Shown: positions 32,601-56,492 of the stretch, piece after piece
How the letters are laid out: each line of letters begins with the position of its first letter
Numbering within the stretch: position 1 is the stretch's first letter
Origin: Asterias rubens
Lineage: Eukaryota
Direction of reading: 5' to 3'
DNA: 64,000 nt
Assembly: GCF_902459465.1 (NCBI RefSeq)
Contig: NC_047066.1
Coordinates: 1,116,001-1,180,000 of the forward strand
Position numbers and translations under genes: made by a program
Notes under the pieces: generated by a model
What the model saw: the letters and a program-made list of their open reading frames with translations, nothing else
Databases searched by the model: none
What the model was told of the DNA's origin: nothing

Positions 32601-35600
32601 GAATGACAACATGAGTTTTAATCCTCATTCTTTACCTTGCTCCTCTTGGAGAACCTAAAGAATTTTCTTCAAACCAATCTTCAATATCCAGGCTGAGTCC
32701 GTACCCTGTTCCATTCCCCTTAGGCGTAACTTGAAGGATTGGTGGTAGACTGTCTTCCATAGCTGACTTAGATAGCTGGTGGATAACATGAGCTAGCTCT
32801 GGAGGGGAGGCGGTGGTACGAGGGTTTAGTGGGAGAGCTTGAGTCATTAGAGTCTGCCGGTTGTTGCTCAAGTAGTGGGTGTTGTGCTTGTAAGGATAGC
32901 TTGTTTGCAATCCTGTTTAAACAACAAATTAATATCAATTTCAATTTGTGTTACACCATGTCAGTAAATTTGTTCCTTTTTAAACATGTATTTTACAGAT
33001 GGGTTTATACCAAAAGGCGTCGCTCTGCGAAGCTCTATTTTTAGGTTTGGTAAAAACGAAGATACAACAAATGGGCAACTAACCTGTTGGGCTCGTATAA
33101 CTTGTTGTATACTTTGATTTCATGGCATCTTCATAAGCTGGTGGAGACTGCTGAATGTTGTGAGGTGGTGATGGAGTCTCCCGATCTGAGTAGTGGCGTG
33201 ATCGATACTGCTGGAAGCTATTGTCCATCTTACTGGCCTGGGAGTCTGCAGAGGGTGACGTCATTGCTGGTGGACACCCACTAAGGTATTGAGTAGTTAA
33301 ACTACTGGTGGACATGGAGGCTTTACTCGACAGCGCTTCAACAGCTGATGAGTGTGGTTGATCTCTTGTGTTCACATTGTTAGAGTTATTCCCTTCGCTC
33401 CCGGTGTAGGGAACCTGGGTAGGGTTACAAGCGAGAGATTGGCTGAAAAAAGGTGTTGTACCTCCAACGGTGAAGTTCCCCGATCCAGCCAAAGACTGCA
33501 TCTTGTAAGACGTCTGCTGATGGCGTTGCCCTTGCGATGACGTAGGGAGAGAAAATGACGATGATGGGAATGTACCGCTGTAACTGGACACTAAGTGAGT
33601 GTTCTGTGGTTGGGACAGTAAGCTATTTGTATCCATTTCTCTTTGAGACTGGATTTCTCCCTTTGAGACCATCTCACTTTGGGCTGCATCTTGTTCCTTA
33701 CTTTCGCTTGAGAGGGGCTCCTGTGGAAGTTGGGCACTCTGGAAAACCCCTACGGAAGTCACGGCATTAATGGAGTCAACATGAGTGTTGGAATCCTTCC
33801 CTGGTTCGGTCACAATCACTGAAGGTTCTGCGATACTCTGTGGAGCATTCATGACATCTACGTTGGACTCTTGCTCCTTGTTTTTACCCTGCATCTTGTT
33901 CCATCTCTCAAGCATACTCCTGTCTTCTTCGGTAAGCAAGACAGACTTGGCTTCATCATCGTTTTGTGCGTTCTTCTTACCCTTTCCCTTCCCTTTCTTC
34001 TGACGCTCCTGAGATCGACGGAGCTTCTGGCGTCTTTTCTGTTCACGTTCTCGTTGGCGTGCTAGGGCAGTTATTGGCATCTTACCTCCACCTTTTTCGC
34101 CCTCGGAATCTGAAAGTTGTTAATAAAAAATATATTAGAAATCACAATATATGACAGAATGAAAATCTGTTGGTAAACTTAGATTTTAAAACATCCTGAG
34201 TGTGGGTTTTTGGTCTGGTATGGCTTGCCAAAAACAACTGTTTGTTTGCTGTAATCTGACTAGCTAATCACACCCTATCAAGCTACATGTTGCCCTATAT
34301 AGGACTCTTCCTCTGTACACAGCAGAAAAATATATGCTGCCATGGAATGTGAATCTGTTGAAATTGGTGCTTTCTTGCAGGTAAGATTTGAGTTATAAAA
34401 TGAAGCTTTGAAAATTTTCCGCCCCAGAAATGGACCCTGATATCCAGGACGTCACTGTAGTACAATACGAAAGTGTAAAGCCGCCAGGGCTACCTATCAA
34501 GCATACAAATTGTATACATGAATTTAAAAGTTTCCTGGCTGCATGTTTCAACTCTTAAATGTCACAAGAATTAAAGATTTAACTAAACAAGTTTTTAAAT
34601 CTGATTCATTAAAAAAAAGACTCCACTTCATATTTTTAGTACTTAAAAATATTTCTTCAAATATACCTTTTTTTTCTAGCATTTTAAACGACCACAGAAA
34701 TTTATTTGTCAGGCCTAATTGACAGGATGTTGAAACCCAAGTTTAATATAAAGAAATGAAAATCTAATACACAGTGTAATAATAACAAAACAACACAATC
34801 AAATAAGATGAGAAAAGAAAAGGTTAGTCTATCTTTTTTAGGCTCGGAGAAATACTCTGATAGAGTTTAAACTTCAGGACATTAACAAATGGCAAGATGA
34901 AAAAAGCTGACACTTTCTTAATACACAGCAGCTTCACATACAGTACATATACCACAGAGAACAGACTTTCTGATCCAACAAGTTTTAGCAAGAATTACAA
35001 AGCACTGAATGTTTATGTCAACACTTCAGGAATGATTGCAACAAAATGGATCATACGTCTCGCCAAAAATTATAATTTTCAGAACTCCAGATGACATGAA
35101 AAAGCTGCCAACTGTTGCATCTTGCAATCAGGAAGATGTTGAACAACAAACAATCAGGGAGATATTTACAATTACAATCAAATAAAAGGGGAAAAGTTCC
35201 CATAATAATCAGGGAGATTTTCCAAATGTGTCAATCTAAACATTTAGAATAGTTTATCTTCAGGGAACTATTTGCAGAGTCAAGGAGAGTTGGCAGCTCT
35301 GTGTGATTGGAGTACAACTAAATTACCTGACCTGGGTCAATAAAAAGAAATCACACTTTACGACTTCATGTTCATTCTGCAGAGTGACACAGAGTAAAAC
35401 AATCAATTCTACACACTGAATTAATATCTCACCTTTTCTCATTTTGTTCTTCAAAGCAGAGTTAAGCAGGGCAGCTTTGATGAGTTTCTTAGTGTCATCT
35501 GAAATTGTTTTCTGTCCTGCGTTTTCATAAACCAGAGCCTGCTCTACAGATTTGCCGACAGCTTCTTCAACGGGTGCAGCTATACGTGAAGAATCCGCAA

Positions 35601-37851
35601 CAGAACCAGTCTCTTCTTGCTGACCTCTTGCACTCTTCATATCAATGTCCAGAGACTCTGATGAGCTGGTACTGGAAGGTGTGATACTAGACTCAGTTAG
35701 GGGTTGTTTCGCCTCACCGTGGGCACTTTTCATCTCAACATCTCCTGAACTTCTTGGGATGGAAGGAGCAGTCAGATGCTCAAGCGTTGACGCATCTCCT
35801 GAAAGTTCTTGTGTTTTAGCAATTGCATTGTTTTGTGCTGAGCTTCTTGCACTTTTCATGTCGACATCTTCTGTGACTGACAAGGAAGGCATTGCCACGA
35901 CAGTTAAAGTCTCCACTGACGAAAGAGAATCTTTGTCTGAATTTGATTCAGAGGCTACGACCTTCTTTTCATCAACAGGGCGGGACGGAACTTTAAAGAC
36001 AACGTCTTCAGTTGAACTTTTGGTTTCTGAGTTTGGAATGCTCTCTTCACGATTGGCAGTTGGCAAGTTTTTGGCAGGATCAATCGATGCAGCGACTGTT
36101 TGTGCAGTAGCTCCTTTGGTTTCCTGTCTAGCTGCAGAAGTGACCGTAACTGCAGTTGATGGTTTCAAGATAGGAGCAGAGCTGGGAAATTTCTTTCCGG
36201 CAAAGAGCTTGGTTCTCTGGTACTTCAAGATCATCTTGCCAACATTCTGCCTCATCTGCTGGGCATTCAGATCATCTTGCTCAAAAGAAAAATCAAACAC
36301 AGGATAACAATTCGGCTCATCCTCCGGATCGTGATATTTGGAAAGAAAAGGATGAGCGAGGGCGTCAGTGACTGAGATTCGGTCCTCTGGGTTGAAGACT
36401 AACATCTTAGATAACAAGTCCAACCCATTATCATCAACCTTTGGGTATTTCTCTCTCAGATTGACACATCTTCTACCACCGAAATTCCGATGAAAGAAAT
36501 TAAAGATCTGATCACTGTTTGACGATCGGAGCAGTTTGTCTGGTGGCATACCGAGCACCTCGATGATGAGAGTCAACTGATGCATGGGATTTCTTCCTGG
36601 AAAGATCTGTCGACGTCCAAGCATCTCAGCAAAGATGCAACCTACTGACCACATATCTATTGCATACGAGTAGTCATCGTTTGAAAACAGTAACTCTGGC
36701 GCACGATACCAACGTGTGGCAACGTATACAGTCATAAACATCTTACGTTTGGAGTCAACATTACCTGACAGCCCCCTAGCCATTCCGAAATCTCCAATCT
36801 TCAATTCACAGTTCTCGTTCACTAAGAGGTTACTGGGTTTTAGATCACGGTGGACGACATTGGCAGAGTGGATATACTTCAGCCCTCTGAGGATCTGGTA
36901 GAGGAAATAGCGAATATGCTCCATGCTGACTGACTGCTGAGAGTGGATAATCTGATGAAGATCGCTTTCCATCAAATCAAGAACCACGTACACATCCTTG
37001 AAATCATTCAATGGTTCTCTTGGCATTAGAATCTCTCGGATTCCGATAACGTTCTCATGACGGAAGTGCCGCATAATCTTCAGTTCCCGGTAGGTTCTCT
37101 TGGCTGTTGTGAGTTCCTCAAAGGCATTTGGTATTTTCTTAATGGCTACCTTCTCAGAGTTTTTCTTGTGTGCGGCTGAACAAACAACTCCATATGCACC
37201 TGTGGTAAGAAGAACAGTTTCAAAAGACTTTAAAATTTAGCATGGATAATAAAGACTGTTTTAAATTCAAGGTAAACTGGGTGTAAAAATGCCACTTGAC
37301 TTGTTTCAATGCTAGTGAAAAATGACAGAATGAATTATCAAATCAAATGGAATGTGCAGTTTTTTAAAAAGTACAATGTATGAAAATTAATTAGCAATTA
37401 TTTAATTCGTTACCATTTTTAAGGGTACATAAGTGCTCTTGAAAAAAACCAAAAAAACCAAAAAAAAAACATTTCAATAATAATATAGAAGAGTTTGCGG
37501 TAACACCATGTAATAATAATCTCTAAATGAGTTGGGGTGGTTCTGAAAAGAACCACTTCACTTCAGAGCGAGCCGTTTCTCACACAATGATCAACCTTTC
37601 CCCATTGCTTGTTACCAAGTAAGGTTTGTGCTTATTATTATTTTGAGTAATTACCAATAGTGTCCACTGCCTTTAATAACAAATTTCAAGCCAGCCCCTG
37701 CTTGATCTCCTTCAGGGATGATTTCATAGAAGTTGCACTGACCTGTTCCAATGTTCTGGATGGCTCTGTATTCCGAGTTCTCAAGGTCAAAGTTCACATC
37801 CAAACATTTTGATTTGAATGCCATGGCATTCTTTGCTGCTGCTTGCTGCAT
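23645..37851 (-). CDS. MAPK7: Mitogen-activated protein kinase 7 (ERK5), 1117 aa, 5 coding exons
   Basis: Exons complement(37743-37851, 35433-37199, 33084-34109, 32636-32912, 23645-23819), all GT-AG with matching phases, 3354 nt. Kinase motifs [33 protein letters not shown]5 hallmarks: AAKN..F..DVNFD N-terminus, [13 protein letters not shown] region, [10 protein letters not shown] and [15 protein letters not shown]-terminal activation domain. In-frame TGA upstream of the ATG. Confidence 0.93.
24902..27247 (+). CDS. Harbinger Myb/SANT-like (trihelix) DNA-binding protein, 268 aa, 4 exons
   Basis: Exons 24902-24948, 25883-26163, 26644-26790, 26916-27247 (phases 2,1,1; 807 nt). Three Trp helices (PNWEHEE, HWKQL, KWSD), TGGG motif across a junction, acidic tract, KKPKL, coiled C-terminus. 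Exon 1 is the least certain. Confidence 0.85.
25545..25690 (+). mobile_element. tRNA-derived SINE in Myb gene intron 1
   Basis: B-box-like GTGGGTTCCAATCCCACC followed by a conserved-looking body ending in an A/T-rich tail. Confidence 0.55.
27545..27901. mobile_element. MITE family A nested in the Harbinger intergenic spacer
   Basis: TTAA|AGGCAGTGGACACTATTGGTAA ... TACCAATAGTGTCCAGTGTCT|TTAA. Confidence 0.8.
28745..28912. mobile_element. Short inverted-repeat element with asymmetric termini, same family as 45854-46617
   Basis: TTTATGAATGGGAATAAAAG..GTTCTTAAACGGCCGTTTAAAACC / GGTTTTAACTGCCGTTTAAGAACTCG..CTTTT..CTTATTTAC. Confidence 0.6.
28941..32363 (-). CDS. Harbinger (HARBI1-like) DDE transposase, 347 aa, 4 exons
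   Basis: Exons complement(32175-32363, 30094-30560, 29427-29528, 28941-29226), phases 0,2,2; 1044 nt with no stops. Motifs [64 protein letters not shown]. Confidence 0.92.
30600..31083. mobile_element. Family B MITE in transposase intron 1, interrupted by a 150-bp hairpin MITE (30744-30893)
   Basis: Family B body and right end AAAAGGTACCCAAATCC; the insert has arms AATGGGAGACTTTC..GCAGCAGACTTACCGGGTAAAT / ATTTACCCGGTATGTCTGCTGC..GAAAGTCTCCTATT. Confidence 0.7.
35101..35300. mobile_element. Degenerate hAT-like MITE in a MAPK7 intron
   Basis: AGCTGCCAACT ... AGTTGGCAGCTCTG inverted ends with internal CAGGGAGA repeats. Confidence 0.5.
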
Positions 37852-42573: not shown

Positions 42574-43168
42574 TTATAGCTCAACAAGGTGGGCCAATCC
42601 ATGCATGTGTGTTAAAAAATAAAATCTAGTTAATAACGGGCGAGGGTCGAAGAGATCCGTCTTCGACCTCGCCGCAGCGTTTACAAATTGTAAAAATTTT
42701 TCCACATTTTGGTGAGGGTCGAAGATCTCAGTCTCTGACCTCGCCACGGAGTGTACAAATTGTATCTATTTTGTTGACATATTATCGGTGTTCCCAAACA
42801 AAACAAAGTTTTAACAGTGGAAGTTTACTGTTAATATGATATTGACCTGTGCGATAAGAATACGTTGGGTACATGCGACTTTTAAAGGTGTTTTAAAAAT
42901 ATTTAAACATGTAGTATCAGACCCCTTTGTTATATAACTGTCTGAAGGATCAATGATTATGATTTTTGCAATTTTCATTTAACAACAGCTGTCCTTTTCC
43001 CCAGATACAAAAAGAGAATCCAACTTACAGCTCAAACAATGGTGTGTCTTCTAAAAGTGCCTTCAGGCACTGAATCTTCATCCTCACAAAATGCAAAGTG
43101 GCGTCTGCTGCCCAGCCTTTAAGAAAAGATGACAACAACAGTTGGAAAGGAACATTGGGGAGAGAACA

Positions 43169-46100
43169 ATGGACTCAGATTTAGTACGATTGCCAGTTAG
43201 TCGTGGCGGAATCGCAAATGAAAGCTACGATGCCACCCAATCGAGATGTGACAGCAATAACAACCGCAATGGAAGTCCGGCCATCACAGATGATCTTCTC
43301 TTGTACTCACCTTCGACCTCAAGCAGCGATAAGGATTCCCAGTTTTCACCAGAAAATTACCAAGATGAGGAGTTCTATGGAAAGTTAAAGGTCCGAAAAT
43401 AAATGAAAGGAACATGTTGCCTTGGATCGGTCGAGTTGGTCTTTGAAAAGTGTTCTGTAACTGTAGAAAGATTTTGTCAAAGTAGAATACGATGATCTAC
43501 AAATAAGCCTCGAACATGCATGGTTTTCTTTTTACCTCGTCGACTAACACGGTCGACCATTTATGTGAGTCAATGGTTTGACTCCCTTTAATGGACGACC
43601 ATGTTAGTTTGCGACGTAAAATGAAAACTGTGCAATTTTGAGTGATACTTGTGTGGATCATTATATTCTACTTTTAGAAACATCTTTCTAACCATATGCA
43701 TTTCAACACAAATGGTTTTAAATGCTTTTTATAGACCAACTCGTCCAATCCAAGGCAACGTGTTCCCTTAACAATCAGACTTGGTCTATCGTTTTGATCA
43801 GGGCACCAAGCAAGGCATTTCCTCCTTACTAAAGGGGGCTTCGGATGGGGAAACTGATTTCTATTGGAACTTCATGGGGCACCGAGGCAATGACCAGAGA
43901 GTATCAGGCCTGAGTAATTAAACTTCAAGTAACTACATGTTGTCGTGATGGTATTGTGATGATCTTAAAGGGTCTATGTACTTTTTCCTCACACAAGACA
44001 CAATGTCCATGGATTTCCATTAAACTTACACAAATTGAAGGTAGTTATAGTGGAAAGCTTCCCTTGAAATTTGTCTTACTGAGGTGCTGCAGTGTTTTAG
44101 AAATGAGTAAAACAAATGATTTTTGTCTCAGTTTTAGCATGTAAGAACCCATATACCAGTTATGCTATTGCTATGTTTATGGCATATTATCATAACTGGT
44201 TAATGAGTTTTTACATGGTGAAATATTTTTCGTCTCACTAAGACGAAAATTATTTTGTGACTTGTCTTACTCATTTCTCAATAACTACAGAACCTTAGTT
44301 AGATTTGAAGGGAAGCTTCTTCAATAAGTTTAATGTAAATCTGTGGACATTTTGAAAAAGTACCCAAATCCTTTAACACTCTGTGGTCCTTACCATAGGT
44401 TGTGATATAATCACATCCTATTGCTAGATTTATGGAACTCCTTTCATATCTTAATAGTAAAGGTGTTCATTTGAATAATTCCAGTTCATGAATGAAAACA
44501 AATTTTCACTTTACAGTGCAATCCACCACAACACCAGTGGCTTCATCAGACTGGCGACTCACCACTCGTGGTTTTCTCCTTTAGTTATCAGAGACAACTG
44601 TTTATAAGAGCTAGTTCTAAATGTTGTGAAGTTTCATATCCTTAGTTAAAGATTCTGTGTTGTCAGACTTGACATAAACAGTTCATTGCAAATGGCTATC
44701 ACATCGACCTTCAACCTTTGACCTGCTTTAGCTCAAAGCTAGCCCTTGTTTGTTTCAATGCGCTGTATATCTTTTTAATATTAATAATAACGATAATAAC
44801 TATGTGACTTACACAAGTTCTTTCAATTATTTGTCATGTAGGTCAAAGTTAGGAAAGACGGCAAAAAGCTTGTTGAGAAGAAACGGCGTCAGGATCTTCA
44901 GCAGCAGTATTCTAATTTAAGGATGATGGTGCCAGGGTTGCAGGATATTGAGGGCCGTACGCCATTCTCCAGGAATTTTATTCTCAAAAACAGTACGTTG
45001 ACAGTGTTTCCCCATAAGCCTGGAATAAACATGTACTTCCAGCGAATGCGAATGGGAAGCGAATTTTGACGACACAGGGCAGTTTTGCATGGAATGTTTT
45101 GCAGGAATTGAACAATTTCAACCGAAAAAAACTTTGACGTTTCAAATTCCAACGTATAAGGAAAACCATGCAATTTCGAGGCATATTTGTGACATGTGAG
45201 GATCAATATATTCTACTCTTAAAACAAATTTCTTCTACTATATTCTACTATAAAATGCAATTTTTAACAAATGGTTTGAAACGCTTTTCATGGACCAAAT
45301 CGCCCGATCCAAGGCAACGTGTCCCTTTAAGTCTTAAAATTTAAGTTCTTGGTGGACCTTAGGGACAACCAAACCATAAATCAAGGATGCCCCAGCCATC
45401 CTATAGTACAAATGAACTCTTTTCAACAACTGTTTATATTATTTTCTAATAACTATTGCTTCTTTGAATAAAGTTAAACAATTAGTCAGCTAATTTCTTT
45501 GCTTTGAGTTGATTTCAGATTTGACCGTCAACTTTCACAATGGTTACAAAAAAATGATTTTCGTGTCTCAAAAGTTGCAAGCTTTCTCGTTCATTTTCTT
45601 TTATTTTCAGCCTTTAACTACATTGAGCAGTTGAAAACCTCGGTACGTTCATCTCTGTACTTGGCCAATGAGCTGCGACGAGAACAAGAATACAGCCTGA
45701 GATTGGAGAGAGAACTTCTGATGTGGCAAAGGAGAGTTGCTGATTTGAGGTAAAACATTGGAATCCCAAGTTTACTGAAAGCTGTTCACTGAATGCCCTA
45801 GTTTTGGTCTTGATGGTGATGAGTGTCCAGCTGGAATATCTTTACAGTGTTTAGTAAATAAGGGAACAAAAGAGTAGACGGCGAGTTTTTAAACGGCCGT
45901 GTAAAACCTTGCAGGGTGGTTGCAGTGCGATAAAGCCACGAACTGTAAAACCGACAGGGTCGTGGCCTTGTGATAAAGGCCCGAGCTGTAAAACCTTGCA
46001 GGGTCGTGGCCTTGTGATAAAGGCCCGAGCTGTAAAACCGACAGGGTCGTGGCCTTGTGATAAAGGCCCGAGCTGTAAAACCTTGCAGGGTCGTGGCCTT

Positions 46101-48200
46101 GTGATAAAGGCCCGAGCTGTAAAACCGACAGGGTCGTGGCCTTGTGATAAAGGCCCGAGTCGAAGGCAAGGGCTTTTATCACACGGCCACCACCCTGCAA
46201 GGTTTTTAAAGGCAGTGGACACTATTGGTAATTGTCAAAGACTAGCCTTCACAGTTGGTGTACCTCAACATATGCATAATAAAACAAACCTGTAAAAATT
46301 TGAACTTGCGAGATAATAATGAAAGAAAAAAACACCTGTCACACGAAGTTGTGTGCGTTTAGATGGTTGATTTCGAGACCTCAAATTCTAAATCCGAGGT
46401 CTCGAAATCAAATTCGTGGAAAATTACTTCTTTCTCGAAAACTAAGGCACTTCAGAGGGAGCCGTTTTTTAAAATGTTTTAAACCCTCAACCTCCCCAAT
46501 TACTCGTCACCAACAAAGGTTCTATGCTAATAATTATTTTGAGTAATTACCAATAGTGTCCACTGCCTTTAACAGCCGTTTAAGAACGAGTCACGACTCT
46601 TTTATCCCCATTCATAAAAATGCCCATATGTTAAAAAGCGAAACAATCTCACAATTATAGTGACACTGTTTCTTTTGCAAATTTTGTGAAGTTTGCGATT
46701 TTTCAACAACTTTTGTACAAATCTTTTGTGCGCATCTGTCTGTGTTCATCGCGTGTACACACATATTAGGCGCTATTACTAATACCTATGAATTGCGTTG
46801 CGCGTAACTGTAATTGGCGTACATTAGCTTGTGCGCTCACCGACCGAAGCCAGGCGAACTTAAACAGCTTTAGCTCTAGCCACCAAAAGGAAGTGAAAAA
46901 CTTACCAGGGTGTTTATAAATAAGGAATAATAATATAGACTTGTAATGTGCACATTTCCAACATTTTTGCTGCAAAAGAAAGAAAACAGACACAGCAAAA
47001 TTAGTCTTCGAAAACCTGTGACATTAGAAGTTTTGAGAAGAGATTTGAATTGTGTGGTACAAAGACAAGATCTAGTAAAAAAAAATTTGCGGCGTATCCT
47101 GGCCGAGTAATGGTCTAGGCATCGAACTCAAAACCTGATGGCCTAGTAATCTGAGTGTGGGTTCGAATCCTGGTCATGACACTTATCAGCAAATTTGTTC
47201 TTTTATCCAGGATAACGGGTCATATTAACCTCCTTAGCGCTATAAGCAGTTTGAGGTTATATGTTTACCAGGAACCTGAGGAAGTTTGGATTAACTATAC
47301 CTGATGAAGGGGATAATATATATAAAAATATTTAATAGTGCCTTGGTCTAACAATATTTGGCATCAAGTTGGTTCAGTGTTTTCTTTTCCTGCCTTTCAC
47401 CTCTGTGGATTCTGGTTCAAATCCCACCTTGGACCAGAGCCTTGCATGTGGATCAGGTTTTCAGTCCAAACCTAATAACGTGTCTTACCCCCCACTTGGA
47501 TTTTCCTCCCACATTTAAAATTGAACATTTCTTGTAGTTTCCTTTTCACAACCCTGTTATTGGCACTTGCACTGTTTGATGTATTATGAAAGAGATATGT
47601 GTGCTATGTAAGAAGCAACTATTACAATTTACCTGTGTCTTATTTTGTATGAGCAGTTAAAGCCATTGGACACTTTCTGAACAGAACAAAAATTAAAAGC
47701 TCACAGATTTACAAATAACTTACAGGGTTTACAGAAGGTAATGGTGAAAGACTTCCCTTGAAATATTATTCCATGAAATGCTTTCCTTTTTGAGAAAACA
47801 TTAAAACAATTATTGATTCTCGATATTGAGAATAACGGATTTATTTTTAAACACATATCATGACACGGCGAAACGTGCGGAAACAAAGGGCGGTTTTTCC
47901 TGTTATTTTCTCCCGACTCCGATGACCGATTGAGCCTAAATTTTCTCAGGTTTGTTATTTTATATATAAGTTGTGATACATGAAGTGTGGTCCTTTGGAC
48001 AAAACTGTTTACCGATGTTGTGTGTTTGCTTTAAGCTGTGTTTTTTTTTATGACAAGTGGAGCACAAATTTAATAACTGACAGATTGTTTTTATTCTGGT
48101 TAATTGCAGAGAGAAGCGGAAATCCAAAGATATGAAACCCTCTATGCCCGGACAAGGAGGTATTGTTAACAGCATGGCATCTTCCTATAGTCATTCATGA
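43169..48200 (+). CDS. Divergent bHLH-leucine zipper transcription factor (Myc/Max/Mad-Mnt-like), 200 aa, 4 coding exons
   Basis: Exons 43169-43390, 44842-44992, 45611-45749, 48110-48200 (phases 0,1,2 all consistent). Spliced domain: KKLVEKKRRQDLQQQYSNLRMMVPGLQDIEGRTPFSRNFILKNTFNYIEQLKTSVRSSLYLANELRREQEYSLRLERELLMWQRRVADLR. The first donor (GTCCGA) is weak and the terminal exon is less certain. Confidence 0.8.
43408..43767. mobile_element. MITE family D
   Basis: AGGAACATGTTGCCTTGGATCGGTCGAGTTGGTC / GACCAACTCGTCCAATCCAAGGCAACGTGTTCCC|TTAA. Confidence 0.8.
43969..44372. mobile_element. MITE family B
   Basis: TTAA|AGGGTCTATGTACTTTTT ... AAAAAGTACCCAAATCCT|TTAA. Confidence 0.75.
45854..46617. 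mobile_element. Inverted-repeat element with internal alternating 44/43-bp tandem array, right arm interrupted by a family A MITE (46210-46568)
   Basis: Units GTAAAACC(TTG/GA)CAGGGTCGTGGCCTTGTGATAAAGGCCCGAGCT; arms TAAACGGCCGTGTAAAACCTTGCAGGGTGG / CCACCCTGCAAGGTTTTTAA[MITE]CAGCCGTTTA. Confidence 0.75.
47097..47185 (+). mobile_element. tRNA-derived SINE head
   Basis: A-box-like TGGCCGAGTAATGG and B-box GGTTCGAATCC followed by GGTCATGACACTT. Confidence 0.6.
47365..47530 (+). mobile_element. Degenerate tRNA-derived SINE
   Basis: B-box GGTTCAAATCCC and downstream GGATTTTCCTCCCAC, resembling the core of the 49248 copy. Confidence 0.5.
47661..48030. mobile_element. MITE family C (reverse orientation)
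   Basis: TTAA|AGCCATTGGACACTTTC ... TTACCGATGTTGTGTGTTTGCT|TTAA. Confidence 0.8.
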
Positions 48201-48364
48201 ACTTTGAACCTACACAATCTACACAATCCAGCAACATCAAAATAAGGCCCGGTCAAGGTGTTTATGAATCTGGCATCAGCCATGGCCACATAACTAAAAT
48301 GACCCATGGTCCTTTTCGCTTCAGCCAATGAAAAAAAACTTACAAAAATTTGTACTTTCTGTAT

Positions 48365-48860
48365 GTATCAATCATTCAATCAAATCAATCATTGAGCATT
48401 TGAAGAGCGCCGCCTTTCTAGTTGCCTATTCTGAGGCCCTTATAGTAAAGTGGCGAAAAAACTAAGACAAAAGAGTTGACAGAATTTCATGTGGAGATGA
48501 AAAGTGCAATGAGCTAAAAAGCAGGTTTGACGAGATGTGTATGGAGTTGATATGGGAGATCATTGCATAGCTTTGGTGCACATGAAACAAAACTCACATC
48601 ACCTGATGAAGAATGCGATCTAGGTTTGTTCAACTGTGGTTTGTTTGAAGACCTCATATTTGGCCTATGATAGTACATTTATGTTAATAACATGTCTCTT
48701 GTATAAACTGAGAATGGACTAGGAAGTGCCTTTCAAGTCAAAAGTAGGACTTTTTAATTAATTATTTGGGTAACCAAAGCAATGCTGTAAGTGTTGGATT
48801 AATGGTCAAGTTTCTAGTAGTTTATGAAATTGGTCTGTTTTGAGGAGAGTTGCTGAGGTT
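48365..48860 (-). mobile_element. Decayed L2-type LINE 3' fragment
   Basis: Minus-strand translation gives broken L2 ORF2 C-terminal motifs (LHWLPK, IKK.LLLT, GD.SF..CAPKL.NDLP) followed by a (TGAT)n-like tail. Confidence 0.55.
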
Positions 48861-50241: not shown

Positions 50242-51800
50242 TTAAAGGAAGTGATACACCTTTACAGATTGTTTCCAAAACCCAATAAGTACTATTTCTT
50301 TTGTATACAAGTCAGGGTTAGATAAACTAAGCATTTTGTTAAAATTGTATTACCCTTGTATCTTGTAAAACTAAAAAGAAAAACTCTGAAGACCCTCTCA
50401 TACTTTTTTACTTACGTACTGGAGTTTTTTTCACACAAGGTTTGTATGTTCTTACTTATGTGAAAGGTTTTCTTATAATATTATTGTATTCTTCATTTCT
50501 GAAATAACCATGTCTTTCTTGTTGGTGTGTGAAGTTGTTTAGTTTAAATAAGTGTTTCTACTTTTTAGTTTAGTATTTAAATTTATTAGATAGATTTATG
50601 TGGTTGTGTTAGTAATGTAGTATTCGGATTACATAAAGAAGTTTTCTTTGTTGTACAAATTTACAAAAAATCAAAAGGTTGGTAAAACAAATGTACTTAA
50701 TAGTTATCTAGTAAGGTTTTACGGTAACACTGTGTGCATGGGGAGTGAAATCTCTCTATGAGTTGGGGTTCTGGAAATAACTGTTGGTGGAACAATTACT
50801 CATTTTAAGAATTGCCACAACTTGAGAGGGATTTCATTCTCATGGTGGTTCCACAACCCTGGGGTTGTATTCTCCACTATGCAAAGTTTCAAATCCCACT
50901 AAGTTAATATGAAATGTGGCCTTACAGCCATAATTGGTGCCTCAGAAGAAATTTGTAAAAATAGTACTTAAATTTGTTATAATTTTGTGCTACTTGTTGT
51001 ATATTTTGTTATTGAAGAAACATATTCCTTGTGAGACTTTATGGGTTAGATTAAAACATGCTTACTTTGTAGAATTTGTGTTGTTTGAACATTATTTGGT
51101 AGTTAGTGATGAAGGGTTTTGTTGAGGAAAAGACGGAGGCTAATAGTTTTGGTCAGAGATGAGGCACTTCACAGGTGTTGCATGCTTCCATCTTTCAGCT
51201 GAAAAAAGGCTATTGTTTCCCTAAAAAAGTACCCCTAAAACATGCTCTTTGATCTACAGCTATAGTTCTCTCAGTTACTGTTCCAATAATTATGTGGTTG
51301 AAGTGCCATCATTCTTGTGAACTAAACTTGGGTCAATTTTTTTTGCCAGAGGTTTCTGTCAGAAACTCTCGTGCCTGTATTAGTGTATTTACAGAGTTGT
51401 TTTTTTGTGGGGGAAAATCGCGTCATATTGTAACTGGTTTGTTGGAATTTAAACTGCCTTTTAAACTCTCTTTTATAAAGTTATTGTAAACATCGTGTTG
51501 TTATTTGGAGCAGCTGGCTAGCAGGTGGCTTACGATTATTATTTATCGATCAATAAATTTGGTATTGTGGCTATTTTTCAATCCCATTCGACAATTGAGG
51601 GCGCTACTCCACTTCTTAAAAACACACGTGTACAATCGTATTGTTGTGTACATACACAATGTGCACTGTTGATCTTGTGCAACCAGACACAAAACAACGG
51701 ACGACGAGCGATCGCGCGCGGTTGTCAGATAAAGAGTCGAGTGTAAATTCAAGCATTGGTAGGCCCACCCTCTTCATTTGGCGTGGTAGTTTTTCTCAAA

Positions 51801-54800
51801 ATGACGGCTTCAAGCACATCTAGAATCCGTATTCCCAGATCCCATATGTTATCATCATGGGTACTTTGTGCATTAGGAATTGTGCTCTCTGTTTATGCAC
51901 TGTACGTAGAAACATCAAAGGAATCGAACCCTGATTTTACGGCGATGTGTGACATTGGTCAAAGCGTTAGCTGTTCCAAAGTGTTTACATCTAGGTAAGT
52001 AACTGTTGTGGTTAGCGGAGTTTCACAAATACTATCAGTATCATCCAGTCAGTAGCTTGTGTTAAAACGAATTAATCTACATATTATATATGAAGTTATA
52101 GTCTTTCTGTGCAACAAGTAGGCGTTTTAATTATAAGCAAATAAATATTTTGTTTAGGGTTGGCCTTTCATCAAGGCCAACCCAAGGGCAACCTCGTTAA
52201 ATGTCTGTCGCGGTGATATGATAGATAGCGTTCTGACTCTATTCCTAATTGAGTTCCCCGTGATTCCCATGGTATTTTCGTCGCTAGACTGCTGGCTCCA
52301 CGAAACTACTGCTCTCACGACTACCGTCCCATGTAAATGGGGAGTAGAACTATAGTTAGAAGTTGACAACCAGCAGTTGCGCGAGAGCAGTGTTCTCGCG
52401 AGAGCACCGCCACAACTTGACTATCTTACCGCGGCAGACCATTAACAACCTGTGCGCAACCCTGCCTTGTGGTGTAAATTGTTCTTAATCTTACCATGTA
52501 GAGCATGCAATAAACACTATGATCTTTAACTATACTCGCACTAGTACTATAATACACTAGTCTACCGGGTAGGCTAGTTAGTGTTCAGACAACTCGTCCA
52601 TAGGACAACTCGACCATTACAACTCGACGGTTGAGACAGCTCGACCATTCGGACAACTCGACAGACTTTTTTTTCAACTGTCAGACAAGTCGACGGATTG
52701 CCGTGACGGGGGCCTCACCACAACAATGACCACCTATGTACTCAATAAATTATGCACCCATCTTTGTAGTCTTTATTCGGTTTATGCTCTTTAAGTTTTT
52801 TGCGAAGATTTCAAATGAATAAACGAAGGCTTAATTTTCCCTGATTATGGCAGGTACGGAAGAGGGTTTGGAATTATTGGGCGAGTTCTAGGAGAACATC
52901 ATATATTGAATCAACCTAACAGCATATTTGGTATTCTTTTCTACTTTCTTCAAGTTTTAATTGGTAAGTACTTTAAACTAACTAACTGTTTCCCTTTTTC
53001 TTCTGAAATTGTGACCAGTTATTTTTTTTAACACAACAAATAGGCTAAATAATGTTTTTGTGTTGCGCGCTCTCAGTATCTCATAAGAGAAAAAGAAGTA
53101 AAGTACCCCCTGCAACAAGCAGAGAAAGGGCCTTGGTGCCCTTGCCCATGAAGAATGAAGAATCGGCAGGGTAGGAGTGGGATGTCTGATCATCAGGTAG
53201 AGAAAGGGCCTTGGTGCCCTTGCCCATGAAGAATGAAGAATCGGCAGGGTAGGAGTGGGATGTCTGATCATCGTAGAGAAAGAGCCTTGGTGCCCTTGCC
53301 CATGAAGAATGAAGAATCGGCAGGGTAGGAGTGGGATGTCTGATCATCAGGTAGAGAGAGAGCCTTGGTGCCCTTGCCCATGAAGAATGAAGAATCGGCA
53401 GGGTAGGAGTGGGATGTCTGATCATCAGGTAGAGAGAGAGCCTTGGTGCCCTTGCCCATGAAGAATGAAGAATCGGCAGGGTAGGAGTGGGATGTCTGAT
53501 CATCAGGTAGAGAGAGAGCCTTGGTGCCCTTGCCCATGAAGAATGAAGATTCGGCAGGGTAGGAGTGGGATGTCTGATCATCAGGTAGAGAGAGAGCCTT
53601 GGTGCCCTTGCCCATGAAGAATGAAGAATCGGCAGGGTAGGAGTGGGATGTCTGATCATCAGGTAGAGAGAGAGCCTTGGTGCCCTTGCCCATGAAGAAT
53701 GAAGAATCGGCAGGGTAGGAGTGGGATGTCTGATCATCAGGTAGAGAGAGAGCCTTGGTGCCCTTGCCCATGAAGAATGAAGAATCGGCAGGGTAGGAGT
53801 GGGATGTCTGATCATCAGGTAGAGAGAGAGCCTTGGTGCCCTTGCCCATGAAGAATGAAGAATCGGCAGGGTAGGAGTGGGATGTCTGATCATCAGGTAG
53901 AGAGAGAGCCTTGGTGCCCTTGCCCATGAAGAATGAAGAATCGGCAGGGTAGGAGTGGGATGTCTGATCATCAGGTAGAGAGAGAGCCTTGGTGCCCTTG
54001 CCCATGAAGAATGAAGAATCGGCAGGGTAGGAGTGGGATGTCTGATCATCAGGTAGAGAGAGAGCCTTGGTGCCCTTGCCCATGAAGAATGAAGAATCGG
54101 CAGGGTAGGAGTGGGATGTCTGATCATCAGGTAGAGAGAGAGCCTTGGTGCCCTTGCCCATGAAGAATGAAGAATCGGCAGGGTAGGAGTGGGATGTCTG
54201 ATCATCAGGTAGAGAGAGAGCCTTGGTGCCCTTGCCCATGAAGAATGAAGAATCGGCAGGGTAGGAGTGGGATGTCTGATCATCAGGTAGAGAGAGAGCC
54301 TTGGTGCCCTTGCCCATGAAGAATGAAAAATCGGGCCTGGAGTAGGCTATGCAAAAAAAGTTTTTTCATCAACATTTTTTAGGACATCTTTGCTTTATTG
54401 AAATCATTGCATTATGTTTAATCAGCCACAACATTGTGAACATTTGTTTAGGATAAGGACTTTAGGCTTGATTTAGGACAAGGTAACTTTACGCTCTGCC
54501 TGTTCATAATTCCTGGCAGTTCATACCGCAGGGGAAAAAAAGGTTTGAAATTCATTAAGTTTGTAGTGATTCCTTCAGTTGTTTCTGACAAGGTGTATAG
54601 TAATTAACAATCCAGGTTAAAATACCATCTTTTTAATCCAGGATATACTTTATAGATTAAAAAATAAAGAATTAAAACAACTATTATCAAATTTATCAAC
54701 TCAAGCATTGTGGTACAATGTATGTGTGTCAGCGTTGTAAAAGAGACTAAAGTTCAAGACTAAGATCTTCCGTCTGAGACCAAGACATTAATGTCCGAGT

Positions 54801-56492
54801 TCAGAGGGAGACCTGGAAACAGCCGAGACCTCAACAGTCTGCTGGAGTCGGGTTTCTATACAGGTGTCCCAGGGAACTCTGTCTGCCGACGATTCTGTCC
54901 CCTGTTTAGGAAATTAACATGGGCTGGAGGAGGAATGTTCAAAAGAGGGCGCTTTCAGAATAAGTTTGTGCACAGTTCGCTGTATGGGGGGACAGAGTCT
55001 CCGGGGGAACAGAATCTCCGGTCAGGCCGGGACCTGTCCCCAGACCTACAACACTGATGTGTGTGCTGTTTGTGAGTTCAAACAGCGGACATATAACAAA
55101 ACAGGACCATAGAGTCCAATGATTGGGAATGGTCCTCAGTTGGAAAACATGTGTAAAACCAATGGGAGCTGTTGCAACAAAGAGGGACAATAGGAGGTTC
55201 GCAGTTTGCAGGGGTAGACAAGCTTGGTTGTGTTGTTAATTATGTACAACGTGTCACAATGTGTTTCAAGTATTACCAGGACTAGAACCTGAAGGGTGCT
55301 TTAGTAAAAACTGAATGCACAAAATACCAGCAACTTCTACATTTCAATTAAAACTTTAATTCAATTTTAGCTTCACTTGTTACAATTTGTCCCAGTTTGT
55401 TTAATATTCTAGATTGAGAGAGTGAGGGTTGTGTGCCATCTGTTGCTGGTTTAATCTCATGTTATCAACACAAAATATCAAATAATTTAGCAACCATAAA
55501 TTTTTATTTTTTATCAATAAAAATGTTTATTTTACATATCTTTTGTAATAAATTTACTGAGAAGCAATTTCTGTTTTCAAAGTCCAAGGTCCAAGCATGA
55601 TTTTTGTTCTAGTTTAGAGCAGCATTACTGCTCTTAAATGTTAGGCTAATGCTTGTAGATTAGAATAAAGTGAAACAATGGTCATAGGCTTTATTATGAA
55701 CATTCCAAAACCAAAAGGATGTGCTGAATCACTTCAGCACCTTGCATGTAGCCATCATAGCCTGGATCCCACTCAAGGCCATTTGATTACACTGTAAGCT
55801 AGACTGATAACTATTAATAAGGCTACAGTATCTATTATTTAGGCCAAATAGAAACAAACAAAGACAGTCATTGTGATGTAAATGGAGTACTGACTGGAAA
55901 AGAGTAAAAGTCAAGTTCTGGCAGGCTGGCAGGCCGGACTAAAAATAAATAGGCTACATGTAAATTTGACAGAGGGCGCTGTCTTAAATTGGCATTGCAT
56001 GTACTAAGTGCGCCAGTTGGGCTGAGTTTGGCTGTTTCTCTCTGGCAACATTGAAGATTAAAAAGAGCAAAAAAATTAAAAGTCAGAAAAGAGCAAAAAA
56101 ATTAAGAGATAGATTTTGGAAATTTAGCCTTTTTTTTTGGGGGGGGGGAGGTGGTTTTGTGGGAGGAATCTTCTTTTGAATTTGAAGTTTCAGTTCAGTC
56201 AAAAAAATTGCACTTTTAAATATATTTTACAGTGTAATATTGTTACAACTCATCTATTTTGCTTGTTTGTTTTTCAGGTCAGATTCACACATTGTCTGCC
56301 TGTAACTTCCTGATCATGACTTCCATCCTGGCCAATCTTGGCTCTGTCTATCTCGGCTACATCCTCTACTTCATCTTAGAAGATGCTTGCATCGTTTGTA
56401 TCTCAACCTACATCGTCAATGCCCTGTTGCTAGGCGTCAACATTCTCAAGTGGACATACTTAAAGAGGAACCTTTCAAAAAAGAAAGAATGA
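51801..56492 (+). CDS. VKORC1: Vitamin K epoxide reductase (VKORC1/VKORC1L1 family), 172 aa, 3 exons
   Basis: Exons 51801-51994, 52854-52963, 56278-56492 (phases 2,1). Motifs [38 protein letters not shown] and the CIVC redox site. Confidence 0.93.
53121..54333. repeat. 78-bp minisatellite, about 15.5 near-identical copies, in VKORC1 intron 2
   Basis: Unit AGAGAGAGCCTTGGTGCCCTTGCCCATGAAGAATGAAGAATCGGCAGGGTAGGAGTGGGATGTCTGATCATCAGGTAG; explains the 400-aa and 349-aa repetitive ORFs. Confidence 0.97.

What the first reader, a model, noticed from the sequence alone, without database searches (positions are those of the whole stretch)
43169..48200. Hidden Myc/Max/Mad-like bHLH-ZIP gene with a non-canonical basic region
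Seen: four phase-consistent exons; the three carrying the domain are missed by the ORF track. Together they give basic EKKRR, helix 1 ending LRMMVP, helix 2 ILKNTFNYIEQL and a heptad zipper. Established: group B E-box binders use H-x3-E-x3-R; here Lys replaces His and the helix 2 Lys is Arg (FSRNFIL). No Myc box I/II or Mad SID is recognisable, though YSPSTSSSD..QDEE faintly recalls Myc's central acidic region. Inference: a lineage-specific or undescribed member of the Max network with altered DNA specificity or a dominant-negative role.
Basis: partly seen in the sequence, partly recalled or inferred. Interest (0 to 1): 0.72.

Follow-up and report, generated by a model that had tools for sequence, protein, structure and literature searches.

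The report
Sea-star-only orphan bHLH-zipper gene
This is a real, expressed four-exon gene of the starfish Asterias rubens for a small DNA-binding protein of the helix-loop-helix-zipper type; public annotation lists it only as "uncharacterized", it is found only in sea stars, and it fits no named subfamily.

Summary
The four exons (43169-43390, 44842-44992, 45611-45749, 48110-48200, + strand) give a 200-aa protein. It is letter for letter RefSeq XP_033626992.1, "uncharacterized protein LOC117289901" of Asterias rubens. Transcript contigs from four runs and two species labels join exactly these exons. Pfam finds one HLH domain and nothing else.

Relatives were found only in sea stars: A. amurensis, a third forcipulatid-like species, Patiria miniata and Acanthaster planci. 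Synteny with Patiria is kept (ERK5-like kinase | bHLH | VKOR), and the gene is single-copy.

- Lys at basic-region site 5 lies within the published group B signature (K/H-x-R), and Max itself has Arg at the helix 2 position, so the basic region is not non-canonical.
- Myc, Max, Mad, Mnt, Mondo, Mitf, USF, SREBP and AP4 all exist elsewhere in the genome.
- A bHLH tree leaves this gene an orphan on a long branch.
- The only significant remote match is TFEB.
- The zipper runs three residues out of phase with helix 2, as in MiT/TFE proteins and unlike Max or Myc.
- Intron positions do not match the sea star's Mitf gene.

Most likely it is a lineage-restricted, E-box-binding dimeric factor with an unknown partner. 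It is a new member of a known kind and of moderate interest.

The parts
43005..43168 (+). 5' untranslated part of the first coding exon. It follows an acceptor AG at 43003-43004. At least 83 nt more of leader come from an upstream exon outside the stretch laid. It holds two short upstream ORFs (43039-43122 and 43091-43132).
   Evidence: Transcript contigs X1 record 1, X2 record 6 and X4 record 16 start matching at 43004; X1 record 1 has 83 more letters 5' of this (table 8). ORFs and the sequence.
43169..43390 (+). Coding exon 1, residues 1-74. It comprises a disordered N-terminus and a conserved Ser-rich/acidic stretch, SPSTSSSDKDSQFSPENYQDEEFYGKLK, which runs into the pre-basic helix.
   Evidence: AF2 pLDDT is below 50 for residues 1-61 and a helix starts at 61. 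Residues 47-74 are 71-100% identical among sea stars.
44842..44992 (+). Coding exon 2, residues 75-124 plus the first base of T125. It carries the basic region (K82 at site 5, E86 at site 9, R90 at site 13), helix 1, the loop and the first half of helix 2 (SRNFILKN). It ends in a phase-1 intron inside helix 2.
   Evidence: Pfam HLH at 23 bits on this exon alone; splice junctions in transcripts; 94% nucleotide identity to the third species' cDNA-like contig L063.
45611..45749 (+). Coding exon 3, residues 125-171: the rest of helix 2 (TFNYIEQL) and the leucine zipper. The heptad phase shifts by three residues around T134-V136 (45637-45645). Core positions are d = L142, E149, L156, W163, L170 and a = L146, S153, L160, V167.
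   Evidence: Heptad scoring; self-contacts in the dimer model; continuous helix 115-178 in the AF2 model.
48110..48200 (+). Coding exon 4, residues 171-200: a basic end of the zipper helix (EKRKSK), a poorly conserved disordered tail and the stop codon TGA at 48198-48200.
   Evidence: The C-tail is 23-38% identical to the valvatid orthologues.
48201..48750 (+). 3' untranslated region. It continues at least about 527 nt beyond 48750.
   Evidence: X1 record 1 matches 48108-48750 at record positions 528-1170, with 527 further letters (table 8).

Best explanation
LOC117289901 of Asterias rubens encodes a small (200 aa) transcription factor of the bHLH-leucine-zipper class. It belongs to an orphan family found so far only in sea stars (Asteroidea). 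Its build is a disordered N-terminus, a conserved Ser/acidic patch, a group-B-type basic region (K82, E86, R90), helix 1, an unusually conserved 11-residue loop, and helix 2 running without a break into a zipper of about five heptads.

Shown:
- The gene is spliced and transcribed as modelled.
- It is single-copy and syntenic across sea-star orders.
- The bHLH-ZIP part is under strong constraint.

Inferred:
- It binds a class B/C E-box (CACGTG/CACGCG-like) as a parallel dimer. Glu86 and Arg90 would read the CAC/G half-site and Lys82 would take the place of the usual His.
- Its zipper is three residues out of phase with helix 2, so its partners should be itself or other phase-shifted zippers (Mitf/TFE, perhaps USF), not Max, Myc, Mad or Mlx.
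- It has no recognisable activation or repression domain. It therefore most likely acts by site occupancy or as a partner subunit, as Max does.
For: Gene reality: GT-AG exons in one frame, spliced transcript contigs in 4 runs under two species labels, and identity to RefSeq XP_033626992.1.

Domain: PF00010 at 29.7 bits against a 20.7 cut-off, with no other Pfam family even at E<=10. AF2 gives helices 61-103 and 115-178 with pLDDT up to 97.

Distribution:
- phmmer of exon 2 against 1.84 billion representatives of any length found only the sea-star cluster, plus one short stretch (query residues 29-44, E 8.2e-4) in a 928-aa protein that was not examined.
- Word-indexed searches with the protein, the profile and the domain alone found only four sea-star proteins.
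- There is one copy in the 417.6-Mb genome.

Orthology: kinase(-) | bHLH(+) | VKOR(+) is collinear with Patiria, and the four-exon structure is the same.

Constraint:
- Basic region 88-100%, helix 1 79-100% and loop 82-100% identical, against 39-43% for the N-terminus and 23-38% for the tail in valvatids.
- Organism B contigs show 4 differences in 599 nt of exons 1-3, against 27 other letters plus 28 gap letters in the stretches covering exon 4 and the 3' UTR (table 8).

Group B signature K/H-x-R: PMC2258200.

Dimer: the homodimer model of residues 66-178 scores 0.56 against a best control of 0.00. That mark was reached by 21 of 30 proteins solved as pairs and 0 of 23 solved as single chains; on animals, 7 of 16. 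Runs agree in at least 95% of contacts and pLDDT is 83.

Zipper phase:
- The best heptad frame is 3 in all five orthologues, as in TFEB, MITF and USF. Max, Myc, Mondo, L048, SREBP and AP4 are in frame 0.
- The self-contacts of the dimer model (129, 132, 135, 142, 146, 149, 153, 156, 160, 167) use that shifted frame.
Against: - No DNA-binding or dimerisation experiment exists.
- The dimer pass may come from the model's memory of solved bHLH-ZIP dimers. On eukaryotes the mark was reached by only 1 of 7 proteins with no older solved relative.
- Invariant Glu149 and Trp163 at core d positions, and Ser/Asn153 at an a position, are poor homodimer core residues. They may mean an obligate heteropartner that was not identified.
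- 'Sea stars only' rests on annotated proteins and on a 50-residue phmmer query. Unannotated genomes of brittle stars, crinoids or sea cucumbers could not be searched.
- The heptad score is a simple hydrophobicity count of my own.
Confidence: 0.62

Rival explanations
1. It is a strongly diverged offshoot of the MiT/TFE family (Mitf/TFEB/TFE3). It has kept the family's stammer-type zipper and heterodimerises with the sea star's single Mitf/TFE protein, changing or blocking that protein's DNA binding.
For: - TFEB is the only significant remote match: 7ux2, E 2.5e-6 with the single sequence and 1.8e-5 with the profile. The profile alignment is gapless from helix 2 into the zipper; both alignments have a 2-residue gap in the loop. 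A local phmmer gives TFEB 27.9 bits, MITF 17.9, A. rubens Myc 16.0, Max 12.4 and Mondo 7.9.
- The basic region RKDGKKLVEKKRR resembles [13 protein letters not shown], and FSRNFILK resembles WNKGTILK. Loop length differs by 2.
- The phase shift sits at T134-V136, the same place as the MITF stammer R259-Q261 (PMC6954422). That paper reports that MITF pairs only with zippers carrying the same insert.
- The A. rubens Mitf zipper is itself in frame 3 by my reading of its sequence.
Against: - The tree does not place it with the well-supported MiT/TFE clade (95/99), although the AU test does not reject that placement (p 0.197).
- The helix 1 hallmark [13 protein letters not shown] is absent.
- None of the three A. 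rubens Mitf introns is shared: they lie in the basic region, in the loop and after LRIQ.
- No MITF_TFEB_C_3_N or DUF3371 domain is present.
- A. rubens USF also scores best in frame 3, so the phase is not unique to MiT/TFE.
Confidence: 0.18
2. One reading: it is a lineage-specific member of the Myc/Max/Mad/Mlx network that pairs with Max or Mlx.
For: - In the bHLH tree it falls in an open polytomy with Myc, Max, Mad, Mnt and the Mlx-like L049.
- The phase-1 intron inside helix 2 (IL-xx|) is shared with the three Mlx/Mondo-type genes L048, L049 and L050. It is not shared with Max, USF, SREBP or Mitf (loop introns) or with Mad and Mnt.
- A. rubens Myc is the best-scoring paralogue in its own genome: 16.0 bits with the single sequence, 18.8 with the profile.
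- Like Max, it is short and has little besides the bHLH-ZIP.
Against: - The polytomy has 42/82 support on a stem of 1.97 changes per site. AU p-values for Myc, Max and Mondo/Mlx placements (0.18-0.39) are no better than for Hey or MiT/TFE.
- The zipper is three residues out of phase with Max, Myc, Mondo and L048. By the rule in PMC6954422 that should forbid pairing.
- Scores against the Mlx/Mondo-type genes are the lowest of the candidates, 7.9-12.9 bits.
- There is no Myc box, SID or Mlx/Mondo C-terminal domain (the protein ends 25 residues after the zipper).
Confidence: 0.1
3. It does not bind DNA itself. It acts as a dominant-negative (Id-like) trap for other bHLH-ZIP proteins, because His at site 5 is replaced.
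For: It is short, has no effector domain, and has atypical core residues (E149, W163) that suit heterodimers.
Against: - Glu at site 9 and Arg at site 13 are present, and Lys at site 5 is within the group B definition.
- The basic region is 88-100% identical across sea-star orders and forms a confident helix. True HLH inhibitors lack or degrade the basic region.
Confidence: 0.05

Closest known systems
MiT/TFE family (MITF, TFEB, TFE3, TFEC; PDB 7ux2, 4ati)
   Same: It gives the only significant remote sequence match. Also similar are the basic-region pattern [RK]KDx[HK]xL[IV]E[RK][RK]RR, the loop length and the aromatic-x-basic-x-x-ILK entry to helix 2. The zipper is shifted by three residues at the same place as the MiT/TFE stammer.
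   Different: Lys replaces His at site 5 and helix 1 is unrelated to [11 protein letters not shown]. There are no MiT/TFE N- or C-terminal domains, and no intron position is shared with the A. rubens Mitf gene. It is not placed in the MiT/TFE clade in the tree. It is 200 aa, whereas the solved TFEB chain is 476 aa.
Max (and the Myc/Mad/Mnt/Mlx/Mondo network)
   Same: The architecture is small and consists of little more than the bHLH-ZIP. Arg sits at the helix 2 position (SRNFIL against SRAQIL). The tree gives a loose grouping. The helix 2 phase-1 intron is shared with Mlx/Mondo-type genes.
   Different: Canonical Max, Myc, Mad, Mnt and Mondo genes exist elsewhere in the genome. The zipper is out of phase with theirs. 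Sequence scores are not significant.
Hairy/E(spl)/Hey (the RefSeq name given to the Acanthaster orthologue)
   Same: Lys at site 5 with Glu at site 9 and Arg at site 13, in an EK[KR]RR core. A fish Hey1-like protein was the best non-asteroid hit, but at E 4.7.
   Different: There is no Pro or Gly at site 6, no Orange domain and no WRPW/YRPW ending, and it has a leucine zipper instead (the C-terminus is ...SSYSHS). The 'Hey-like' name is an automatic misnomer.
'Orphan' bHLH genes as defined by Simionato et al. 2007 (PMC1828162)
   Same: It meets their operational definition: it cannot be assigned confidently to any family of orthologues.
   Different: Here the orphan is a family conserved across at least two sea-star orders with conserved synteny, not a single unplaced sequence.

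Membership tests
bHLH superfamily (Pfam PF00010) | HLH profile match above the curated cut-off | tested here: met
   29.7 bits against 20.7, residues 80-133 on profile positions 3-53. Exon 2 alone gives 23 bits.
bHLH group B | Sites 5-8-13 = K/H-x-R, with Glu at site 9 | tested here: met
   K82-V85-R90 with E86. The definition is quoted in PMC2258200.
bHLH-ZIP subclass | Helix 2 continues into a heptad-repeat coiled coil that dimerises | tested here: met
   Continuous helix 115-178. Hydrophobic a/d pattern in five orthologues. The dimer model passes its controls, 0.56 against 0.00. This is prediction, not measurement.
Max network (Myc/Max/Mad/Mnt/Mlx/Mondo) | Orthology to one of the families in a phylogeny | tested here: inconclusive
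   Open polytomy at 42/82 on a long stem. AU p is 0.18 (Myc), 0.39 (Max) and 0.19 (Mlx/Mondo), no better than other placements.
Max network (Myc/Max/Mad/Mnt/Mlx/Mondo) | Uninterrupted zipper in phase with Max | tested here: not met
   Frame 3 here, against frame 0 for A. rubens Max, Myc, Mondo and L048. The dimer-model contacts agree.
Max network (Myc/Max/Mad/Mnt/Mlx/Mondo) | Family-specific extra regions (Myc boxes, Mad SID, Mlx/Mondo C-terminal dimerisation domain) | tested here: not met
   Only PF00010 is found at E<=10. The protein ends 25 residues after the zipper.
Max network (Myc/Max/Mad/Mnt/Mlx/Mondo) | Physical heterodimer with Max or Mlx | not testable with these tools
MiT/TFE | Three-residue stammer between heptad 0 and heptad I of the zipper | tested here: met
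   The phase shift falls at about T134-V136, aligned with MITF R259-Q261. A. rubens USF shows the same overall phase, so the feature is not exclusive.
MiT/TFE | Conserved basic region and helix 1, [20 protein letters not shown] | tested here: not met
   Here the sequence is KKLVEKKRRQDLQQQYSNLR. A. rubens Mitf keeps [17 protein letters not shown].
MiT/TFE | Clade membership and shared gene structure | tested here: not met
   It lies outside the 95/99 MiT/TFE clade, though AU p is 0.197 so that placement is not excluded. None of the Mitf introns is shared.
Hairy/E(spl)/Hey | Pro or Gly at site 6, an Orange domain and a C-terminal WRPW/YRPW | tested here: not met
   K83 is at site 6, there is no PF07527 and the C-terminus is SSYSHS.
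Id/Emc-type HLH inhibitors | Basic region missing or degenerate | tested here: not met
   The basic region is intact, helical and 88-100% conserved.

The most novel reading that the evidence does not exclude
This would be the first bHLH-ZIP protein outside the MiT/TFE family to carry a MiT/TFE-type three-residue stammer. It would have evolved in sea stars as a dedicated small partner or antagonist of Mitf/TFE, a 'Max for Mitf'. It would retune E-box/CLEAR-box recognition through Lys82, with the invariant core residues Glu149 and Trp163 enforcing heterodimer choice.
Probability: 0.15. Interest if true: 0.65.

Novelty: new member of a known kind. Interest (0 to 1): 0.38.

Why it matters
Metazoan bHLH families are ancient and stable, and genes outside them are set aside as 'orphans' (PMC1828162). 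This orphan bHLH-ZIP is conserved across at least two sea-star orders, with fixed synteny and a nearly invariant DNA-reading head, so it is a candidate asteroid-specific node in echinoderm gene-regulatory networks. Patiria miniata is a standard model for such networks. Its zipper phase gives a testable prediction: it should pair with itself or with Mitf/TFE-type zippers and be excluded from Max and Myc. That would extend the stammer-based partner-selection rule, so far documented only for MiT/TFE (PMC6954422). It also corrects a misleading RefSeq name, 'Hey-like', in Acanthaster.

Tried and rejected
- Foldseek of the AF2 monomer against the PDB gave no match at E<=0.001. The top rows were USF2, Ino2/Ino4 and MITF at E>1. 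A two-helix monomer does not discriminate, so this was dropped.
- The ESM Atlas feature search gave only generic HLH clusters at 0.81-0.87 (an SREBP2 fragment, fungal HLH). These are leads below the 0.9 level and were not used.
- Paper searches for LOC117289901 and LOC119728188 found nothing.
Those rows are therefore partial in the tree, and the second half of helix 2 in L049 is unknown.
- The look-up of encoding contigs holds no record for the window's own protein.
- No tRNA genes lie in the locus.
- Pseudogene or chance ORF was considered and rejected, because of the transcripts, synteny and conservation.
- A Hey or Hes identity was considered and rejected, because there is no Pro at site 6, no Orange domain and no WRPW.
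- A retro-copy origin from Mitf cannot be tested with these data.


Full report
**1. What is in the sequence**

The window is Asterias rubens, G000:C5:1116001-1180000. They have GT-AG borders and join into a 603-nt frame of 200 codons. Intron phases are 0, 1 and 2.

An in-frame TGA at 43130-43132 lies upstream of the ATG in the same exon. Pfam's HLH model matches exon 2 alone (23 bits) and the whole protein (29.7 bits; cut-off 20.7). No other family appears even at E<=10.

**2. Is it expressed and spliced that way?**

Yes. Contigs of four public runs under two species labels were laid on 42800-48750.
- One 1928-nt contig (X1 record 1) runs 43004-43388 | 44840-44992 | 45611-45747 | 48108-48750 without interruption.
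- X2 record 7 and X3 record 12 show the same joints as far as they reach; X4 record 18 shows the exon 3-exon 4 joint (table 8).
- The 2-nt offsets are alignment ambiguity at repeated AG.
- The runs are only guessed to be RNA, but genomic DNA could not give intron-less contigs.
- Exon 1 starts at an acceptor at about 43005. At least 83 nt of leader come from further upstream, and the 3' UTR runs at least 527 nt past 48750.
- The organism-B contig differs at 4 of 599 positions in exons 1-3. Its two pieces covering exon 4 and the 3' UTR carry 27 other letters plus 28 gap letters.

**3. Is it known?**

The protein is letter for letter RefSeq XP_033626992.1-995.1, 'uncharacterized protein LOC117289901'. 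It was hidden only from an ORF track. No paper in the library mentions this locus or the Patiria one.

**4. Relatives**

- phmmer with exon 2 against 1.84 billion representatives of any length found only the sea-star cluster, plus one short stretch (query residues 29-44, E 8.2e-4) in a 928-aa protein that I did not examine.
- Searches with the protein, with a four-species profile and with residues 66-178 alone found four proteins.
- These are A. amurensis XP_071790932, an unnamed 203-aa protein, Patiria miniata LOC119728188 (63%) and Acanthaster planci XP_022107363 (59%, auto-named 'Hey-like').
- The 203-aa protein sits on a 1670-nt intron-less, cDNA-like contig. That contig joins the same four exons.
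- In Patiria the gene has the same four exons.
- The A. rubens genome has one copy.
- Identity to the valvatid orthologues is 88-94% in the basic region, 79-86% in helix 1, 82-91% in the loop, 76% in helix 2 and 63% in the zipper. It is 39-43% in the N-terminus and 23-38% in the tail.

**5. Which bHLH family?**

An HLH scan of the genome, with translation of the hits, shows that the canonical group B genes are all elsewhere. My family labels for these loci rest on motif recognition.
- Myc (L032), Max (L036), USF (L037) and SREBP (L041).
- AP4 (L033), Mad (L045), Mnt (L039) and Mitf (L046/L060/L062).
- Mondo (L050) and two further Mlx/Mondo-type genes (L048, L049).

Four tests were then applied.

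(a) Sequence.
- TFEB is the only significant remote hit: E 2.5e-6 with the single sequence and 1.8e-5 with the profile.
- MITF, Myc and Max follow at E 0.005-0.1.
- On one scale the scores are TFEB 27.9 bits, MITF 17.9, A. rubens Myc 16.0, Max 12.4, Mlx-like L049 11.7 and Mondo 7.9.

(b) Tree.
- It has 33 rows and 57 columns.
- The sea-star clade (100/98) sits on a stem of 1.97 changes per site, in an open polytomy with Myc, Max, Mad, Mnt, L049 and L038 (42/82).
- MiT/TFE forms its own 95/99 clade.
- AU tests reject no placement: MiT/TFE 0.197, Mlx/Mondo 0.194, Myc 0.178, Max 0.392, Hey 0.30 and USF 0.112. Group A is borderline at 0.057.
- By the criterion of PMC1828162 this is an orphan.

(c) Introns.
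- The phase-1 intron after IL-xx in helix 2 is shared with L048, L049 and L050.
- Max, USF, SREBP, L044 and Mitf have loop introns. AP4's intron lies at the loop-helix 2 border (after LSK). Mad and Mnt have an intron after helix 2.
- A. rubens Mitf has introns in the basic region, in the loop and after LRIQ. None is shared.

(d) Zipper phase.
- Index 0 was anchored on the helix 2 Ile, and a simple a/d hydrophobicity score was computed.
- Frame 3 scores best for all five orthologues, with d = L142, E149, L156, W163, L170 and a = L146, S153, L160, V167.
- Frame 3 also scores best for TFEB, MITF and A. rubens USF.
- Frame 0 scores best for Max, Myc, Mondo, L048, SREBP and AP4.
- The shift falls at about T134-V136, aligned with the MITF stammer R259-Q261.
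- PMC6954422 reports that stammer as conserved in all MiT/TFE members. It also reports that MITF pairs only with zippers of the same phase.

The characters therefore disagree. Sequence and zipper phase point to MiT/TFE, the intron points to Mlx/Mondo, and the tree points weakly to Myc/Max. I file the gene under none of them.

**6.

Sites 5-8-13 are K82-V85-R90 with E86 at site 9. Group B is defined as K/H-x-R (PMC2258200), so Lys is allowed. From general knowledge, not tested here, Hairy/E(spl) proteins carry the same K5/E9/R13 combination, with Pro at site 6.

Arg in FSRNFIL matches Max ASRAQIL, seen in A. rubens Max and in the PDB alignments. The A. rubens Phe120 is Val in all the other sea stars.

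**7. Structure and dimer**

- AF2 with five sequences gives helix 61-103 (pre-basic, basic and helix 1), a loop at 104-114 and helix 115-178.
- pLDDT is 73-97 through residues 71-180, except 59 for 61-70. Both ends are disordered.
- A two-copy model of residues 66-178 scored 0.56 in three runs, against a best control of 0.00.
- That mark was reached by 21 of 30 proteins solved as pairs and 0 of 23 solved as single chains. On animals it was reached by 7 of 16, and by only 1 of 7 eukaryotic proteins with no older solved relative.
- The runs agree in at least 95% of contacts and pLDDT is 83.
- This supports a parallel dimer but may reflect memory of solved bHLH-ZIP dimers.
- Lowest-error self-contacts are at 129, 132, 135, 142, 146, 149, 153, 156, 160 and 167. 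That is the shifted frame.
- Invariant Glu149 and Trp163 at d positions are poor homodimer core residues, so an unidentified heteropartner is plausible. This is inference.

**8. Mechanism proposed**

Shown: the gene is real, spliced, transcribed, single-copy, syntenic and constrained, and it encodes a bHLH-ZIP with a group B signature.

Inferred: it binds CACGTG/CACGCG-like E-boxes as a dimer. Its partners are limited to itself or to phase-shifted zippers. It has no effector domain, so it acts by occupancy or as a partner subunit. The conserved Ser/acidic patch before the basic helix may be a phospho-regulated modulator of DNA binding; this last point is speculation by analogy with Max.

**9. 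Verdict**

This is a new, uncharacterised member of a known kind. The zipper-phase prediction is the most interesting testable point.

Noticed in passing
window 43039-43132: The 5' leader, which is covered by the transcript contigs, holds two short upstream ORFs. One is 43039-43122 (27 aa). The other is 43091-43132 (13 codons), in frame with the main ATG but closed by TGA at 43130-43132. They may mean translational control.
   Followed up: no
window 45900-46159 and 46183-46580: Intron 3 carries a tandem array (43-nt unit, 87-nt higher-order unit, 3-6 copies, 89-95% matches). It creates the spurious 103-128-aa ORFs on both strands. Next to it lies an interspersed repeat with enormous summed contig depth in all four runs (up to about 3 million). 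Similar high-copy elements sit at 43397-43794 and 47576-47973.
   Followed up: partly
L049 (G000:C5:20163698-20163793): This is another atypical group B bHLH exon on the same chromosome: RRTQNKLLEQKRRDSLKNSIDNLKNALP. It is Mlx-like but has Asn instead of His at site 5, and it has the same helix 2 phase-1 intron. Its second exon was not recovered.
   Followed up: partly
L038 (G000:C8:19282246-19282392) and L044 (G000:C18:1445779-1445877): Two further A. rubens bHLH genes that I could not assign to a family by eye. L038 reads KQMHLIKERQRREDQRSLF... and has a very long branch in the tree. L044 reads KRDSHNEIERRRKCKINIG... and looks USF-like.
   Followed up: no
L037 (A. rubens USF, G000:C18:2265997-2266101 and its next exon): By the same heptad score the USF zipper is also three residues out of phase with helix 2. 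PMC6954422 describes all non-MiT/TFE bHLH-ZIP structures it compared as uninterrupted. The shift in USF appears to lie further from helix 2.
   Followed up: no
P0005 (Acanthaster planci XP_022107363): The RefSeq and UniProt name 'hairy/enhancer-of-split related with YRPW motif protein-like' is an automatic misnomer. The protein has no Orange domain and no YRPW, and it is the orthologue of this zipper protein.
   Followed up: yes
window 23648-37851 (- strand) and 51783-56489 (+ strand): The flanking genes are a large protein-kinase gene (ERK5-like, 1127 aa in Patiria) and a VKOR-family gene. They are collinear with Patiria miniata scaffold JADOBP010000011.1.
   Followed up: partly
L063 (GCA_014845345.1 JACSEG010017100.1): A 1670-nt contig in a genome-assembly accession carries the gene without introns. 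Its 5' part also matches window 42901-43004, upstream of the exon-1 acceptor. It may be a cDNA-derived contig, an alternative unspliced leader or a retro-copy.
   Followed up: partly
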